From NCBI RefSeq assembly GCF_902459465.1, contig NC_047064.1, positions 5,208,001 to 5,272,000 on the forward strand: a stretch of 64,000 bases of DNA. Reading direction: 5' to 3'. The DNA comes from Asterias rubens (lineage: Eukaryota). The notes below the pieces were generated by a model. It was not told the DNA's origin, searched no databases, and saw nothing but the letters and a program-made list of their open reading frames with translations. Shown here piece after piece: positions 16,530-43,076 of the stretch (position 1 is its first letter; each line of letters opens with the position of its first letter). The position numbers and the translations under genes were made by a program.

Positions 16530-16666
16530 ATGAGGGCTGCCCGTGTTGTCATTCTGCTGCTGGCGTGTGGAGTTGGATGTTTTGCCGTAGTATCGGCTAA
16601 CACTAACAGGCGACCACCAAGCGTATTGGGGGAGGGTCAGCTAGATGCGGAGTTGTTGTGCTTGAA
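16530..16666 (+). CDS. Gene B exon 1 (signal peptide MRAARVVILLLACGVGCFAVVSA...ELLCL)
   Basis: ATG with A at -3, n/h/c signal pattern ending VSA, donor AA|GTAAGT phase 2. Linkage across the 20.8-kb intron is inferred from phase match. Confidence 0.75.
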
Positions 16667-40600: not shown

Positions 40601-43076
40601 CGTGTGCTACTGCAGAAGACGCAGCAACAAAGCACCCAAAACGTAGGTCTTTTTACTGAATATGTGGATGTTCATGAGCAGAGTTCAGTCAGTATAGTTC
40701 AATGTTTCGGCAGATTTTAAAGGCAAAGTATACCTTTTGTTTTTTGGGGGAAAGGCTGATTGTTTTAATCCTGTATAAAATGTAGATGTTCAGAATAAAA
40801 TTAACATCTAAAAACTTAATCCGTGGTATGAATACACGCTTCTCAGATTCAAAATTGTGGGCATAAAAATTGTTATCTTTTACATAAACACATTACTTCA
40901 AAGTGAAATGGTCTTCAAAAAGCTTTTTACTATCACATGCTGCTTTTGGCTTCTACGTAAGTAAAGGTTTTACCAGGAGACTTTTGAGACGCTGGCGGCA
41001 GCAGACATAACAGTTTTTTTTTTGCGGCTATGAGCATGCAAGCTCAGTATTGCTCGCATAGGTCTGAGCATGCGCAAAACTGTGAAAAAGGAACGTCTAA
41101 AAGTCTCCCATTTTTAAAGTTTTGTTTATGCAAGTCGCCAGACACACAAGGCCTGAAGGTCACTTCCAAGGTGTGGGCTACAATTATTTTTTTGAATTTC
41201 CATCCCTTTTTCAGAGTGAATACCAAACGTACAATAGTATCCCTCCCTTTAACATAGTGTTTTTGTTTGTATCAGGGTTGTCAATGATATGGAGGAGTAT
41301 GCCGATATTGATGATATAAGAACAATGAGGAGCCAGGGTAAGTAGTAATTGAAGTGAAGATAGTTTTTCTCTAAACAATTTTGTTGGTTCAGCATTCTCC
41401 TGAAGACGATCAGATCATACTGAGCGAAACGTTGAGTCGTTACCCACCGGTTCATATCAGAATGAAAGTTACTCAAAATAGATATTCACATGGTGTTACA
41501 GCAAACCTCTCTTAGGAAAACAGTTACCATGCTGGCCATCGGTAAAAATATACTCGGTCCCCTAAGTAGATATTCACTACAGATTTCATTTTTCACTTAT
41601 TCACATGGTGTTACAGCAAACAGTTATATGCTGGCCATCAGTAAGAAAAGACTCAGTTCCCCACGAAGACATTCACAACAGATTTCTTTTTTCTTTTATT
41701 GATTCTGGTTGTTAAGCCAAGGAATCTCATGAAAGCAAAACTTAATCACTAAACTAGCCAAGAACCCCATGAAGAGAAGTTTTTTGGCGTAGGAAGAAAA
41801 CCCTGGATAATTATTCCAGGGAAAACCCACCCAGTTAGGCAGGGACTGAAAACCCAATGATATTTGTCCTACTTTAGTCTGATTTCTGATTTTGTTTCCA
41901 CTTTGGAAAAATTAGAAAAGTTGTGATTAAATAGCCTGCTGAAAAGTCTATTTAAAGCCTGCAACATGTGTGCATATAGGTCAGCCCTTGTACTTGATAA
42001 AATGTTCCTACTTAAAGACCAAATATGACGCCCGATATTAATTTATTCTTATTTATTTTCGTGTAGCTTCCATGATGAGTCGGCAGAATTTGATTTCAAA
42101 CGAAGGGTTGAACCACCTACCTTGCGGACACAGGCATTTCAACAACGAGATGTACGGGATGAATGCCATTGGCAATGGCCATAGCATATCGACACAGCAA
42201 CAAGCACCAGAGCTGCCTGGCAATCATCCCCCTCCATCCGTCCCACCCCCAGTGCCATCACAGTATCAAGGGCTGAACCGTGGTCCTTTGAGGTCTCAGA
42301 GTGCTATGGGGAACGGAGCCTGCCCACACTGCCATCAAAAGAGTGTCGCTGATAGGAGTGCCACTGCACCACTCATGGATCGCCCGACAGGGCTCGACAT
42401 TTCTGGCAGCGTGGAGGGTGCACGGAACCCGTACATGGCATTGATCAAGACCAACACGTGCCCAACGCCTGGGACGCCACCTGCACCTACCGTGTGCGAT
42501 TGCCACTCCAAGCCGCTCAGTGAGTGTAGCAGTGTCTCTGGGAGTCTCCACTCCGACCCGCAGCGTAATTCGACACACGCGGGTGATCTCCTCAATGAAA
42601 CAATCCAAGAAGCTGACCCCGAATGCCAGGGAGGAAACGAAGATGCACCGGAAGAAGACCCGTACTATTTCAAGATGCAGACAGCTGCGAAAGAGCCAGA
42701 GCCAGAGGAGGTTTCACCACCACAAAGTCCACGATACTTCAAGTTAGAGGATGCAGAAACCATACCGTTAGATGGTGAAAATACACCGATGCTTTATGCA
42801 CCTGATAGCAATGGGAATAGTGTGCGTACAAAGACATTACCTGCAAACTCTGTAGACTCTTCTATAGAGCCGAGCAGTAGGACTGAAAGCTTACCCCTGG
42901 CATCGTTGGCGGACACCCAGCCCAGATCACCAACTGCTGGTGATAGCCCAGTACAATCTCCTGTAAGCCCAGATCTTGCCATGCAGCAGAACGGGATGTC
43001 CAGATCCGTGGAAGGGCTCCCCAATGGAGATTACATGCATCTAGTGAAAGGATCATCAAAGGTCACCAGTGTTTAA
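16530..43076 (+). CDS. Gene B: complete 7-exon gene for an uncharacterised type I transmembrane receptor/adaptor-like protein (583 aa)
   Basis: Exons 16530-16666, 37444-37526, 38332-38551, 39082-39194, 40516-40642, 41276-41337 and 42067-43076 total 1752 nt. Every junction phase matches (2,1,2,1,2,1) and there are no internal stops. Signal peptide, 12 Cys, stalk, TM VIIIAVATGGGVLAIVLFIGCLVCYC then RRR, Tyr motifs, ends KVTSV*. Confidence 0.85.
22790..23020 (+). mobile_element. Degenerate tRNA-derived SINE of a second family
   Basis: A-box-like head, gcgctcgcctctcacca, ccggttttcctccc core; B-box region deleted. Confidence 0.45.
23555..24301. mobile_element. Fold-back TTAA-flanked Kolobok-like MITE (family K2) hosting a hAT MITE
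   Basis: Arms 23559-23743 and 24119-24297 are reverse complements; TTAA|AG...CT|TTAA termini. Confidence 0.8.
23752..24110. mobile_element. 359-bp hAT-superfamily MITE
   Basis: 18-bp perfect TIR TAAGCTTGGGCGATATCG and exact 8-bp TSD GTCTCATG (23744-23751, 24111-24118); subterminal cgatat repeats. Confidence 0.9.
24451..24819. repeat. 126-bp x ~2.9 tandem repeat
   Basis: Units start at 24451, 24577 and 24703; nearly identical. Confidence 0.95.
27200..27575 (-). mobile_element. L2/Daphne-type LINE 3' fragment
   Basis: LFVIPPVMTKSYGERSFVHTASTLWNNLP...FKIALKTHLF* followed by gcgctatataagaat and a (TAT)-rich tail. Confidence 0.85.
29302..29524. mobile_element. ~220-bp MITE; relative at ~61898-62020
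   Basis: TIR cctttttgaggtatggcggac / gtccgccatatctcaaaaagg. Confidence 0.75.
31800..32133. mobile_element. Kolobok-like MITE family K1 (diverged)
   Basis: TTAA-flanked, same internal sequence. Confidence 0.75.
34838..35190. mobile_element. Fold-back TTAA-start MITE, right end eroded
   Basis: ttaaaggaacacgttgccttggatcgg; aaagcgtttg/caaacgcttt and aaatgcatatg/catatgcattt inverted pairs. Confidence 0.6.
37444..37526 (+). CDS. Gene B exon 2 (NCGHRQLTELQQDLDDCKFFRDSTDYR)
   Basis: Acceptor ctaattggtgcag, donor T|GTAAGT, 83 nt, phase 2-1. Confidence 0.75.
38214..38349 (+). repeat. Perfect 45-bp x3 tandem repeat spanning a 3' splice site
   Basis: Unit cagctttgttatctctccccttattcagatgccactaattgtccg. 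Confidence 0.97.
38332..38551 (+). CDS. Gene B exon 3 (Cys-rich; alternative in-frame starts at 38242 and 38287)
   Basis: Acceptor tctctccccttattcag present three times; donor AC|GTAAGT; YATNCPPGVGKGLTKVCMCKESNGACWSC...CPSCLCS. Confidence 0.8.
39082..39194 (+). CDS. Gene B exon 4 (Thr/Pro-rich stalk)
   Basis: Acceptor ccttctttttcag, donor G|GTATAC; NAPTTRPTTPR...SMTTVA. Confidence 0.85.
39281..39667. mobile_element. Kolobok-like MITE family K1
   Basis: TTAA|AGGCAGTGGACACTATTGG...GTGTCCACTGCCT|TTAA. Confidence 0.85.
40516..40642 (+). CDS. Gene B exon 5 (transmembrane helix plus RRR stop-transfer)
   Basis: Acceptor tttgtacccaccag, donor AC|GTAGGT; GRGQPNEVIIIAVATGGGVLAIVLFIGCLVCYCRRRSNKAPK. 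Confidence 0.9.
41276..41337 (+). CDS. Gene B exon 6 (VVNDMEEYADIDDIRTMRSQ)
   Basis: Acceptor ttttgtttgtatcag, donor G|GTAAGT, 62 nt, phase 2-1. Confidence 0.85.
42067..43076 (+). CDS. Gene B terminal coding exon (disordered cytoplasmic tail ending KVTSV*)
   Basis: Acceptor ttattttcgtgtag; in frame with track ORF 42072..43076 (334 aa); raised GC. Confidence 0.9.

What the first reader, a model, noticed from the sequence alone, without database searches (positions are those of the whole stretch)
16530..43076. Unrecognised receptor-like membrane protein with a compact 12-Cys ectodomain and multi-tyrosine tail
Seen: signal peptide; ~110-aa segment with 12 Cys (C-x3-C...C...C...CxC...Cx2C...C...Cx2CxC) and one N-T-T sequon; T/P stalk; TM with juxtamembrane CYC-RRR; ~365-aa Pro/Ser-rich tail with EEYADI, YQGL, NPYMAL, DPYYFKM, PRYFKL, GDYMHL and PxxP runs; C-terminal V-T-S-V. 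Established: YxxM fits the PI3K-p85 SH2 preference, YxxL/I are SH2/AP-2 motifs, and x-T-x-V is a class I PDZ ligand. I cannot assign the ectodomain to any family I know. Inference: a non-catalytic, kinase-coupled receptor or transmembrane adaptor.
Basis: partly seen in the sequence, partly recalled or inferred. Interest (0 to 1): 0.7.

Follow-up and report, generated by a model that had tools for sequence, protein, structure and literature searches.

The report
Sea-star-only orphan membrane receptor gene
This is a real, expressed starfish gene, already annotated only as "uncharacterized" and found only in sea stars; it encodes a single-pass surface protein whose outer cysteine-rich part matches no known family and changes fast, while its long floppy inner tail keeps a fixed set of tyrosine, 14-3-3-like and PDZ docking motifs, so it most likely acts as an enzyme-less signalling receptor or scaffold.

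Summary
The gene is real. Spliced RNA contigs from two Asterias species define seven GT-AG exons. The spliced product is identical to RefSeq XP_033624716.1 (Asterias rubens LOC117288124, "uncharacterized protein", 592 aa).

Exon 2 starts at 37417, not 37444, in the same frame. The ectodomain therefore has 14 cysteines rather than 12, plus a second sequon (N-C-T) that is invariant.

Orthologues were found only in sea stars: A. amurensis, Patiria miniata, Acanthaster planci and one ENA contig. No paralogue of exon 3 turned up in the genome.

The ectodomain matched nothing in Pfam, PDB sequence profiles, AlphaFold2 fold searches, or profile comparison with this genome's own TNFR and PSI domains.

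The tail is predicted to be disordered, yet it is under strong purifying selection (dN/dS 0.11). Seven of its nine tyrosines are invariant. Also conserved are a class I PDZ ligand, an RSATAP (14-3-3-like) site, a GGG motif in the membrane helix and three juxtamembrane cysteines. The YxxM (PI3K-type) motif is not conserved.

The extracellular part evolves at about the neutral rate (dN/dS 1.2).

Best reading: a non-catalytic receptor or scaffold. The function is inferred and has not been shown. Interest is moderate.

The parts
16287..16666 (+). Exon 1: 5' UTR (its 5' end is approximate) plus coding sequence from the ATG at 16530. Encodes the signal peptide (aa 1-23, 16530-16598), the N-terminal linker and the first ectodomain Cys (C44). 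Donor GTAAGT at 16667.
   Evidence: Sequence read and splice phase. RNA contigs carry 352-380 nt upstream of exon 2. Runs X2 and X1 hold 91% and 70% of the words of 16290-16666. Hydrophobic peak at aa 1-25. The junction was not seen directly; it is supported by identity to RefSeq P0007 and by the A. amurensis model.
37417..37526 (+). Exon 2 (110 nt): invariant N-C-T sequon, C50, W53, C54, C57 and C72. AlphaFold2 predicts this part as helical.
   Evidence: Contig pieces X1 record 1 and X2 record 6 begin exactly at 37417 (table 8). AG/GT flanks. Conservation. Secondary structure.
38332..38551 (+). Exon 3 (220 nt): nine of the 14 ectodomain Cys (C87 to C154), the N115-T-T sequon (Asterias only) and the invariant S-Q-E-x-G block. 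Its acceptor is the third copy of a 45-bp tandem triplication (38214-38349).
   Evidence: Contigs of all four runs start at 38332. Sequence. No paralogue in the genome. No Pfam match.
39082..39194 (+). Exon 4 (113 nt): Thr/Pro-rich stalk (aa 155-193). An alternative donor after 39176 gives isoform X2, which lacks M-T-T-V-A-G.
   Evidence: X2 record 6. Boundary refined to the CAG|GT donor. Isoform P0005. The GT at 39177 was read. The stalk holds 11.2 nonsynonymous and 0.8 synonymous differences from A. amurensis.
40516..40642 (+). Exon 5 (127 nt): membrane helix aa 201-224 (40536-40607) with invariant G209-G210-G211. Also the invariant boundary cysteines C221, C224 and C226 (40596-40613), followed by R-R-R.
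   Evidence: Contigs. Hydropathy. Invariant columns.
41276..41337 (+). Exon 6 (62 nt): the juxtamembrane E-Y-A-x-I-D motif (Y244, 41298-41300), inside the only helix predicted in the tail (aa 241-266).
   Evidence: A 61-62 nt block lies between exons 5 and 7 in the contigs. It is the only AG..GT 62-mer that encodes EEYADI and keeps the frame. Helix. Conservation.
42067..43076 (+). Exon 7 coding part (aa 257-592, stop at 43074-43076): the disordered Ser/Pro-rich tail. Conserved motifs:
- Y286 (42153-42155)
- Y323, Y-Q-x-L-N (42264-42266)
- R-S-A-T-A-P (42354-42371)
- N-P-Y379-M-x-L (42432-42434)
- C-x-C-H (42495-42506)
- P-Y456-Y457-F-K (42663-42668)
- Y480-F-K-L-E-D-A-E-T (42735-42737)
- G-D-Y579-M-x-L (43032-43034)

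The 3' UTR continues past 43250.
   Evidence: ORF. Contigs of all four runs. 60% identical to P0001 with the motifs kept. Invariant columns. pLDDT 42. omega 0.107.
43065..43073 (+). C-terminal class I PDZ-ligand consensus: T-S-V-COOH. It reads T-T-V in P0001 and S-T-V in Patiria and Acanthaster.
   Evidence: The [ST]-x-V-COOH rule is established knowledge and was not tested here.

Best explanation
The locus is Asterias rubens LOC117288124. It is a single-copy, seven-exon gene that has been detected only in sea stars.

It encodes a 592-aa type I membrane glycoprotein with these parts, in order:
- a signal peptide;
- a roughly 110-aa disulfide-rich ectodomain of unassigned fold, with 14 invariant Cys and one invariant N-glycan site;
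- a mucin-like Thr/Pro stalk;
- a membrane helix with a conserved GGG face;
- three boundary cysteines;
- a 364-aa intrinsically disordered tail.

Most likely mechanism (inferred, not shown): the protein is a non-catalytic receptor or transmembrane scaffold.
- The ectodomain binds an unknown partner. Its surface is free to change, or is driven to.
- The membrane helix and the probably palmitoylated cysteines place it in a membrane complex or domain.
- Cytoplasmic tyrosine kinases phosphorylate the invariant Y-x-x-(L/I/V/M) tyrosines, which then recruit SH2 proteins.
- The R-S-A-T-A-P site can hold a 14-3-3 protein once it is phosphorylated.
- The [ST]-x-V C-terminus ties the protein to a PDZ scaffold.

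Shown: gene structure, expression, topology features, lack of a family match, conservation pattern and selection pattern. Inferred: every binding and phosphorylation step.
For: Gene and expression:
- Spliced contigs in four runs of two species.
- The translation equals RefSeq P0007.
- The same exons in A. amurensis translate to P0002.

Distribution:
- An exhaustive HMMER search with the tail over 1.84 billion cluster representatives gave only three clusters, all sea star or unlabelled.
- The word-indexed searches added only Acanthaster.
- No paralogue of exon 3 in the genome.

No enzymatic or known domain.

Tail:
- Disordered, with pLDDT 42 and pTM 0.14.
- omega = 0.107, from 7 nonsynonymous and 18 synonymous differences.
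- Tyr 7 of 9 invariant (p = 0.007) and Cys 6 of 8 invariant (p = 0.017), against a 33% baseline.
- Motif flanks are conserved across Forcipulatida and Valvatida.

Other conserved features: the PDZ-type C-terminus is kept although the last ~15 residues are otherwise rewritten. GGG and the C-x2-C-x-C cluster are invariant.

Ectodomain: omega = 1.22 against the tail's 0.107 (Fisher p = 0.0002).

Protein-language-model neighbours are low-scoring leads only. All are single-pass proteins with signalling tails, such as LIME1, MEGF10, the syndecan/neurexin tail and vaccinia A36R.
Against: - No experiment or dataset here shows tyrosine phosphorylation, kinase association, or SH2, PDZ or 14-3-3 binding.
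- Y-x-x-hydrophobic motifs are also adaptor-protein (AP) sorting signals.
- No ITAM, ITIM, NPxY or YxN motif is conserved.
- The YxxM motif is not conserved.
- The PxxP runs lack the flanking Arg/Lys of canonical SH3 ligands.
- No ligand is known. The tissue of expression is unknown because the run labels are coded.
- The ectodomain model is of low confidence, so 'no known fold' is not established.
- Distribution limits rest on databases in which other echinoderm classes may be thinly sampled. The three word-indexed searches are insensitive: one search missed even the Patiria orthologue.
Confidence: 0.5

Rival explanations
1. It is an endocytic or sorting receptor, or a trafficked cargo. The Y-x-x-hydrophobic motifs would be AP-1/AP-2 (clathrin adaptor) sorting signals rather than phosphotyrosine docking sites. 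The protein would cycle between the surface and endosomes, carrying or clearing a ligand.
For: Every conserved tyrosine sits in a Y-x-x-(L/I/V/M) context, which is the AP mu-subunit consensus (established knowledge). No canonical ITAM, ITIM, NPxY or YxN motif is present.
Against: Seven invariant tyrosines with long conserved flanks are far more than sorting needs; examples are N-E-M-Y-G-x-N, N-P-Y-M-x-L-I-K-x-N-T-C-P-T-P-G and Y-F-K-L-E-D-A-E-T. Acidic residues upstream of Y244, Y456 and Y579 suit tyrosine-kinase substrates (established knowledge). The PDZ ligand and the RSATAP site point to scaffolding.
Confidence: 0.2
2. It is a Shisa-like auxiliary or regulatory subunit, or a PDZ-anchored adhesion or junction protein. 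The Cys-rich head and the GGG membrane helix would bind another membrane protein (a channel or receptor) in cis. The PDZ ligand would anchor the complex. Phosphotyrosine signalling would be secondary or absent.
For: The layout matches the vertebrate Shisa/CKAMP proteins: an N-terminal Cys-rich domain, one membrane helix, a long Pro-rich tail and a C-terminal PDZ ligand (PMC10531659; PMC4778035 for the Shisa6 PDZ ligand binding PSD-95). The GGG motif in the helix is invariant.
Against: There is no Shisa_N match, while the same model finds a true Shisa gene elsewhere in this genome at 3.8e-10. The Cys pattern has no CC doublets. No PPxY or LPxY motif is present. This reading does not explain the extreme conservation of tyrosines.
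Confidence: 0.15
3. It is a highly diverged member of a known Cys-rich receptor family, for example the TNFR/NGFR type, furin-like or EGFR-type repeats, PSI, or the three-finger TGF-beta receptor type. Its sequence would have drifted beyond detection.
For: The segment N-C-P-P-G ... C-x-C-x6-C-x2-C-x10-C in exon 3 recalls C-P-x-G and C-x2-C ladders of TNFR or furin-like repeats. That resemblance is from my memory and is a lead only. p75NTR likewise has a stalk, a palmitoylated juxtamembrane Cys and a C-terminal PDZ ligand (own knowledge).
Against: No Pfam match for TNFR_c6, PSI, Activin_recp, furin-like or EGF models. hhalign against this genome's own TNFR repeats gave 0.3% and against its PSI domains 0.2%, with controls at 97% and 92%. 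No PDB sequence-profile match at E <= 10. Best structural Z was 5.0, below the tool's stated noise level. There is no death domain.
Confidence: 0.1
4. It is an annotation or reading artefact: exons of different genes were stitched together, or the locus is a pseudogene.
For: The exon 1 to exon 2 junction spans a 20.7-kb intron and was not seen directly in the stretch I laid.
Against: Single contigs span exons 2 to 7 and carry 352-380 nt more upstream. The exon 1 words are in the same runs. The frame is intact with GT-AG at all six introns. Independent gene models from four species agree. Purifying selection acts on the tail.
Confidence: 0.02

Closest known systems
Transmembrane adaptor proteins (TRAPs), especially PAG/Cbp (PAG1)
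   Same: Single pass and no enzymatic domain. Cysteines at the membrane-cytosol boundary. A long disordered tail with many conserved tyrosines and Pro-rich stretches. A C-terminal PDZ ligand. PAG has 10 Tyr, two Pro-rich regions and a C-terminal V-T-R-L that binds the EBP50 PDZ domain (PMC4861716, read).
   Different: TRAP ectodomains are 'only a few amino acids ... unlikely to function as receptors' (PMC4861716). This protein has a ~170-aa glycosylated extracellular part with 14 disulfide cysteines. There is no sequence similarity. TRAPs are known from vertebrates, and this protein only from sea stars.
Shisa / CKAMP family (Shisa6-9)
   Same: An N-terminal Cys-rich domain, one membrane helix, a Pro-rich disordered tail and a C-terminal PDZ ligand that binds PSD-95 (PMC10531659, PMC4778035; abstracts seen).
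   Different: No Shisa_N profile match, although the model finds a genuine Shisa gene elsewhere in this genome. The cysteine spacing differs, with no CC pairs. No PY motifs. The tail is dominated by invariant tyrosines.
Ephrin-B (reverse signalling)
   Same: A non-catalytic membrane protein whose short tail carries conserved tyrosines phosphorylated by Src-family kinases and ends in a PDZ ligand (own knowledge, not checked here).
   Different: The ephrin ectodomain is a cupredoxin-like fold with 4 Cys, and its tail is only about 80 aa. No sequence or profile match.
p75NTR / TNFR superfamily
   Same: A Cys-rich ectodomain, an O-glycosylated stalk, a palmitoylated juxtamembrane Cys and a C-terminal S-P-V PDZ ligand (own knowledge).
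   Different: No TNFR_c6 match. hhalign 0.3% against 9 TNFR repeats of the same genome. No death domain.

Membership tests
TNFR superfamily (Pfam TNFR_c6, PF00020) | One or more ~40-aa cysteine-rich repeats recognised by the TNFR_c6 profile | tested here: not met
   No hit on exon pieces, whole proteins or ectodomains. The profile finds 13 true repeats elsewhere in this genome and none at this locus. hhalign of the ectodomain against those repeats gave Prob 0.3%, against 97.1% for the split-family control.
Plexin/semaphorin/integrin PSI domain (PF01437) | An 8-Cys ~50-aa module with C-x-W-C, recognised by the PSI profile | tested here: not met
   No Pfam hit. The model finds 8 PSI domains elsewhere in the genome. 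hhalign Prob 0.2% against a control of 91.7%.
TGF-beta/activin receptor three-finger ectodomain (PF01064) and Ly6/uPAR | A three-finger toxin fold with a C-C-x(4-5)-C-N box next to the membrane | tested here: not met
   No Pfam hit on the proteins. There is no CC pair, and the membrane-proximal cluster is C-P-x-C-x-C-S-T. The six-frame genome search with PF01064 found nothing anywhere, so that control is uninformative. The fold itself could not be judged because the model has pLDDT 55.
Shisa / STMC6 | A Shisa_N cysteine-rich domain with CC doublets, and PY motifs in the tail | tested here: not met
   No Shisa_N hit. The model detects a real Shisa at C2:9501472 in this genome at E = 3.8e-10. 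No CC doublet and no PPxY in the protein.
Transmembrane adaptor proteins (LAT/PAG type) | An extracellular part of only a few residues | tested here: not met
   The mature extracellular part is about 175 aa with 14 Cys. The definition comes from PMC4861716.
Transmembrane adaptor proteins (LAT/PAG type) | Boundary cysteines for palmitoylation, a long tail with several phosphorylatable tyrosines and no enzymatic domain | tested here: inconclusive
   The sequence features are present and invariant: C221, C224 and C226, and 7 invariant Tyr. Palmitoylation and phosphorylation cannot be tested with these tools.
ITAM/ITIM immunoreceptors | Y-x-x-[LI]-x(6-12)-Y-x-x-[LI] for ITAM, or [SIVL]-x-Y-x-x-[ILV] for ITIM, conserved across orthologues | tested here: not met
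   No ITAM spacing is present. The only ITIM-like match, S-Q-Y323-Q-G-L, loses its -2 Ser in Patiria and Acanthaster, where it reads A-P-Y and A-S-Y.
Class I PDZ-ligand-bearing membrane proteins (a functional class) | [ST]-x-[VIL]-COOH | tested here: met
   T-S-V, T-T-V, S-T-V and S-T-V in five sequences, although the preceding residues are rewritten. Binding itself was not tested.

The most novel reading that the evidence does not exclude
A receptor invented within, or diverged beyond recognition in, the sea-star lineage. It would have a new disulfide-rich fold whose exposed surface is under diversifying pressure (species, gamete or pathogen recognition). That head would be wired to a frozen, disordered tail that plugs into the ancient phosphotyrosine-SH2, 14-3-3 and PDZ machinery. 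It would be an independently evolved 'non-catalytic tyrosine-phosphorylated receptor' outside vertebrates.
Probability: 0.25. Interest if true: 0.55.

Novelty: new variant of a known kind. Interest (0 to 1): 0.35.

Why it matters
Non-catalytic, tyrosine-phosphorylated receptors and transmembrane adaptors are known mainly from vertebrate immune and nervous systems.

A sea-star-restricted protein with the same inner logic but an unrelated, unclassified outer domain would show that this design arises repeatedly.

It would also give echinoderm biologists a concrete handle on lineage-specific cell recognition. The handle is a single-copy gene with a clear orthologue in the experimentally tractable Patiria miniata.

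The contrast between a near-neutral ectodomain and a strongly constrained disordered tail is a clean example of short linear motifs, not folds, carrying the selective load.

It remains one uncharacterised gene with no functional data, so the interest is moderate.

Tried and rejected
- Word-indexed homologue search with the last exon found only an ORF fragment. Its length window (up to 584 aa) hid the 592-aa protein. The exhaustive HMMER search solved this.
- A search restricted to the ectodomain found only the A. amurensis cluster and missed even Patiria, so it says little about distant relatives.
- Pfam scans of single exons, whole proteins and ectodomains gave only sub-threshold noise on the membrane helix (Orthoreo_P10, MLANA, ETRAMP, a plant Cys-rich domain).
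- The PDB sequence-profile search gave 0 hits at E <= 10.
- The ESM Atlas gave no usable feature hit for the ectodomain. For the whole protein it gave only generic single-pass look-alikes at <= 0.81.
- The AlphaFold2 ectodomain model (4 sequences) has pLDDT 55. Foldseek against AFDB clusters gave best E = 0.37, and VIA-align against 48,161 PDB chains gave best Z = 5.0. Both are noise, and with so weak a model neither shows a new fold.
- The AlphaFold2 tail model showed no folded domain. A zinc-binding mini-domain around C-P-x-C and C-x-C-H is neither supported nor excluded.
- TNFR, PSI, three-finger and Shisa membership were rejected.
- The PI3K-p85 reading of Y-F-K-M was rejected as a conserved feature, because the Met is Val in Valvatida.
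- ORFs inside intron 1 have no Pfam family. No Rfam family lies in 15000-45000.
- A literature search for the LOC and XP identifiers found 0 papers.
- Complex prediction was not used, because no partner is known.

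
Full report
**What is there**

The + strand between 16530 and 43076 carries a seven-exon gene. I laid the contigs of four runs on 37300-43250. These runs behave as transcriptomes, because their contigs skip the introns.

Single contigs joined 37417-37526, 38332-38551, 39082-39191, 40513-40642, a 61-62 nt block and 42066/7 onward. These are X1 record 1 (3599 nt) and X2 record 6 (1176 nt). They carry a further 352-380 nt upstream of 37417 (table 8).

I shifted the ambiguous boundaries to the GT-AG dinucleotides. 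The exons are then:

| Exon | Coordinates | Note |
|---|---|---|
| 1 | 16530-16666 | coding part only |
| 2 | 37417-37526 | |
| 3 | 38332-38551 | |
| 4 | 39082-39194 | |
| 5 | 40516-40642 | |
| 6 | 41276-41337 | |
| 7 | 42067-43076 | ends with the stop codon |

All introns are GT-AG. Together the exons give one open frame of 592 codons.

The exon 1 junction lies outside the stretch I could lay. Four results support it.
- The same two runs hold 91% and 70% of the sampled words of 16290-16666.
- That length matches the extra upstream part of their contigs.
- My translation is letter-for-letter the RefSeq protein XP_033624716.1, [quoted passage not shown].
- The same exon set in the Asterias amurensis locus L023 translates exactly to XP_071788987.1.

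The window is therefore Asterias rubens, contig C3:5208001-5272000 of a 417.6-Mb assembly.

- the signal peptide;
- the Thr/Pro stalk;
- the membrane helix followed by C-Y-C-R-R-R;
- a 364-aa tail with 43 Ser and 43 Pro;
- all six tyrosine motifs and the V-T-S-V end.

The error is the exon 2 acceptor. RNA uses 37417, which has a long pyrimidine tract followed by AG. It does not use 37444. The two sites are in the same frame, 27 nt apart. The real protein gains ten residues that include C50, C54 and an N-C-T sequon.

The Cys-rich core (aa 44-154) has 14 cysteines, not 12.

**Relatives**

An exhaustive HMMER search of 1.84 billion cluster representatives with the tail exon found only three clusters:
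- the Asterias cluster (A. rubens X1 and X2, A. amurensis X1 and X2, and a 53-aa fragment);
- Patiria miniata LOC119729570;
- an unnamed 328-aa ORF on an ENA contig.

A profile search of the 5.8-billion set added Acanthaster planci LOC110974512. All of these are annotated "uncharacterized".

No sea urchin, sea cucumber, brittle star, crinoid or other animal protein appeared. Exon 3 has no paralogue in the A. rubens genome at E <= 10. No paper in the library mentions the identifiers.

The caveat is that the tail is disordered and the ectodomain diverges fast. The word-indexed ectodomain search missed even Patiria. 'Sea-star-only' therefore means 'not detectable elsewhere with these tools'.

**Ectodomain**

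All 14 cysteines are invariant across the two orders sampled. So are W53, the N-C-T sequon, an S-Q-E-x-G block and the membrane-proximal C-P-x-C-x-C-S-T. Overall identity of the core is only 29-32%.

Nothing recognises this domain.
- There was no Pfam family at E <= 10, apart from noise on the membrane helix.
- There was no PDB chain at E <= 10 with a four-sequence profile.
- There was no usable ESM Atlas neighbour.

AlphaFold2 with four sequences gave pLDDT 55 and pTM 0.50. It predicts three N-terminal helices followed by a small sheet. Foldseek (best E = 0.37) and VIA-align over 48,161 chains (best Z = 5.0, below the tool's own noise level) found nothing. With so weak a model that is an absence of evidence.

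- The Pfam models for PSI, TNFR_c6 and Shisa_N each find genuine members elsewhere in this genome and none at this locus.
- Profile-profile comparison of the ectodomain with the genome's own domains gave 0.3% probability against 9 TNFR repeats and 0.2% against 7 PSI domains. Split-family positive controls gave 97.1% and 91.7%.
- The Activin_recp genome search was uninformative, because it found nothing anywhere. The protein-level Pfam scan was negative, and the defining CC-x(4-5)-C-N box is absent.

**Tail**

AlphaFold2 predicts disorder throughout (pLDDT 42, pTM 0.14). The exception is a juxtamembrane helix at aa 241-266 that contains the E-Y-A-x-I-D motif.

Across five sequences, 33% of tail positions are invariant. 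For tyrosine the figure is 7 of 9 (Fisher p = 0.007) and for cysteine 6 of 8 (p = 0.017).

The invariant tyrosines are Y244, Y286, Y323, Y379, Y456, Y457 and Y480. Each sits in a conserved block. Y579 (G-D-Y-M-x-L) is lost in Acanthaster.

The Met of Y-F-K-M is Val in Patiria and Acanthaster, so the PI3K-p85 reading is not a conserved feature. No ITAM, conserved ITIM, NPxY or YxN motif is present.

The [ST]-x-V carboxy-terminus is kept in all five sequences, even though Valvatida carry a different, longer C-terminal extension.

- R/K-S-A-T-A-P, which fits the mode I 14-3-3 consensus R-S-x-pS/T-x-P (established knowledge);
- a C-P-x-C and C-x-C-H pair of cysteine clusters;
- an invariant G-G-G in the membrane helix;
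- the invariant boundary cysteines C221, C224 and C226.

**Selection**

I threaded the A. rubens and A. amurensis coding sequences on the protein alignment and applied Nei-Gojobori counting.

| Region | omega | Nonsynonymous differences | Synonymous differences |
|---|---|---|---|
| Tail (aa 229-592) | 0.107 | 7 | 18 |
| Mature extracellular part (aa 24-197) | 1.22 | 18.7 | 4.3 |
| Cys-rich core (aa 44-154) | 0.77 | 6 | 2 |
| Stalk (aa 155-197) | 4.7 | 11.2 | 0.8 |

The extracellular part differs from the tail at Fisher p = 0.0002. The ectodomain counts are compatible with neutrality, so this shows relaxed or diversifying evolution of the exposed surface. It is not proof of positive selection.

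One ectodomain change, W109R (38409 T>C), also appears in a run labelled with the window's own organism (table 3). It may therefore be polymorphic.

**How it most likely works**

The shown facts are:
- a secreted-pathway signal;
- a disulfide-rich glycosylated head on a stalk;
- one membrane helix with a glycine face;
- basic residues and cysteines at the inner boundary;
- no catalytic domain;
- a disordered tail whose conserved elements are short linear motifs centred on tyrosines, plus a PDZ-type end.

The best-supported inference (about 0.5) is a non-catalytic receptor or transmembrane scaffold. Extracellular binding, or clustering through the membrane helix, would lead to phosphorylation of the Y-x-x-hydrophobic tyrosines by cytoplasmic kinases and to docking of SH2 proteins. 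14-3-3 and PDZ proteins would control location and lifetime.

The rivals are:
- a sorting or endocytic receptor that uses the same motifs as AP signals (0.2);
- a Shisa-like auxiliary subunit or PDZ-anchored adhesion protein (0.15);
- an undetectably diverged member of a known Cys-rich receptor family (0.1);
- an artefact (0.02).

**Comparison with known systems**

The tail works like that of PAG/Cbp, which has 10 tyrosines, two Pro-rich regions and a C-terminal V-T-R-L binding the EBP50 PDZ domain (PMC4861716). It also resembles ephrin-B (own knowledge).

The protein fails the defining TRAP feature of a negligible ectodomain.

The whole layout resembles the Shisa/CKAMP proteins (PMC10531659, PMC4778035), but it fails the Shisa_N test.

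It is therefore a new variant of a known kind of system. It is not a member of any named family.

**Verdict**

The gene is real, expressed and already annotated but uncharacterised, and it is lineage-restricted. Its interpretation is reasonable but untested. Interest is moderate (0.35).

Noticed in passing
window 38214-38349: A 45-bp unit is present three times in tandem in A. rubens. It comprises the end of intron 2, the acceptor AG and the first 16 nt of exon 3. All RNA contigs in four runs use only the third copy (38332). The A. amurensis locus L023 has a single copy, so the triplication is recent. The upstream copies would add 15 or 30 in-frame residues if they were used.
   Followed up: partly
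window 39282-39667 (intron 4): A 386-bp element with ~33-bp terminal inverted repeats, which is MITE-like. The first look at the genome found 4724 candidate copies, and all 40 that were scored are 94-96% identical and full length. It reaches enormous summed depth in the transcriptome contigs (bins 39290-39687). A second abundant repeat lies at about 38700-38860.
   Followed up: partly
window 38409 (codon 109): T>C (W109R in the ectodomain, next to C108) is seen in both organism-B runs. It is also seen in run X2, which is labelled as the window's own organism, so it is probably a segregating polymorphism.
   Followed up: no
window 39177 (exon 4): An alternative GT donor 18 nt upstream of the main one explains RefSeq isoform X2 (586 aa, lacking M-T-T-V-A-G in the stalk). 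None of the contigs that the tool listed for this exon shows it.
   Followed up: partly
window 42354-42371 and 42321-42332 / 42495-42527: The tail has an invariant R/K-S-A-T-A-P (14-3-3 mode I-like). It also has invariant cysteine clusters C-P-x-C (aa 342-345) and C-x-C-H ... C (aa 400-410). The latter recalls the C-x-C-P 'zinc clasp' of CD4/CD8 tails, a resemblance from my memory only. AlphaFold2 gives no fold there.
   Followed up: partly
window 39122-39157 (codons 170-181): About 11 nonsynonymous differences from A. amurensis lie within 12 codons of the stalk, against about one synonymous difference. This is a local hotspot, not spread evenly.
   Followed up: partly
window 27341-27571 (- strand, intron 1): A short ORF whose sequence looks like the C-terminal end of a retrotransposon ORF2 (my reading). 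It has no Pfam hit. Intron 1 (20.7 kb) otherwise holds no recognisable gene or Rfam RNA.
   Followed up: partly
window 59762-59982: A run of 221 N (assembly gap or masked). It was left untouched.
   Followed up: no
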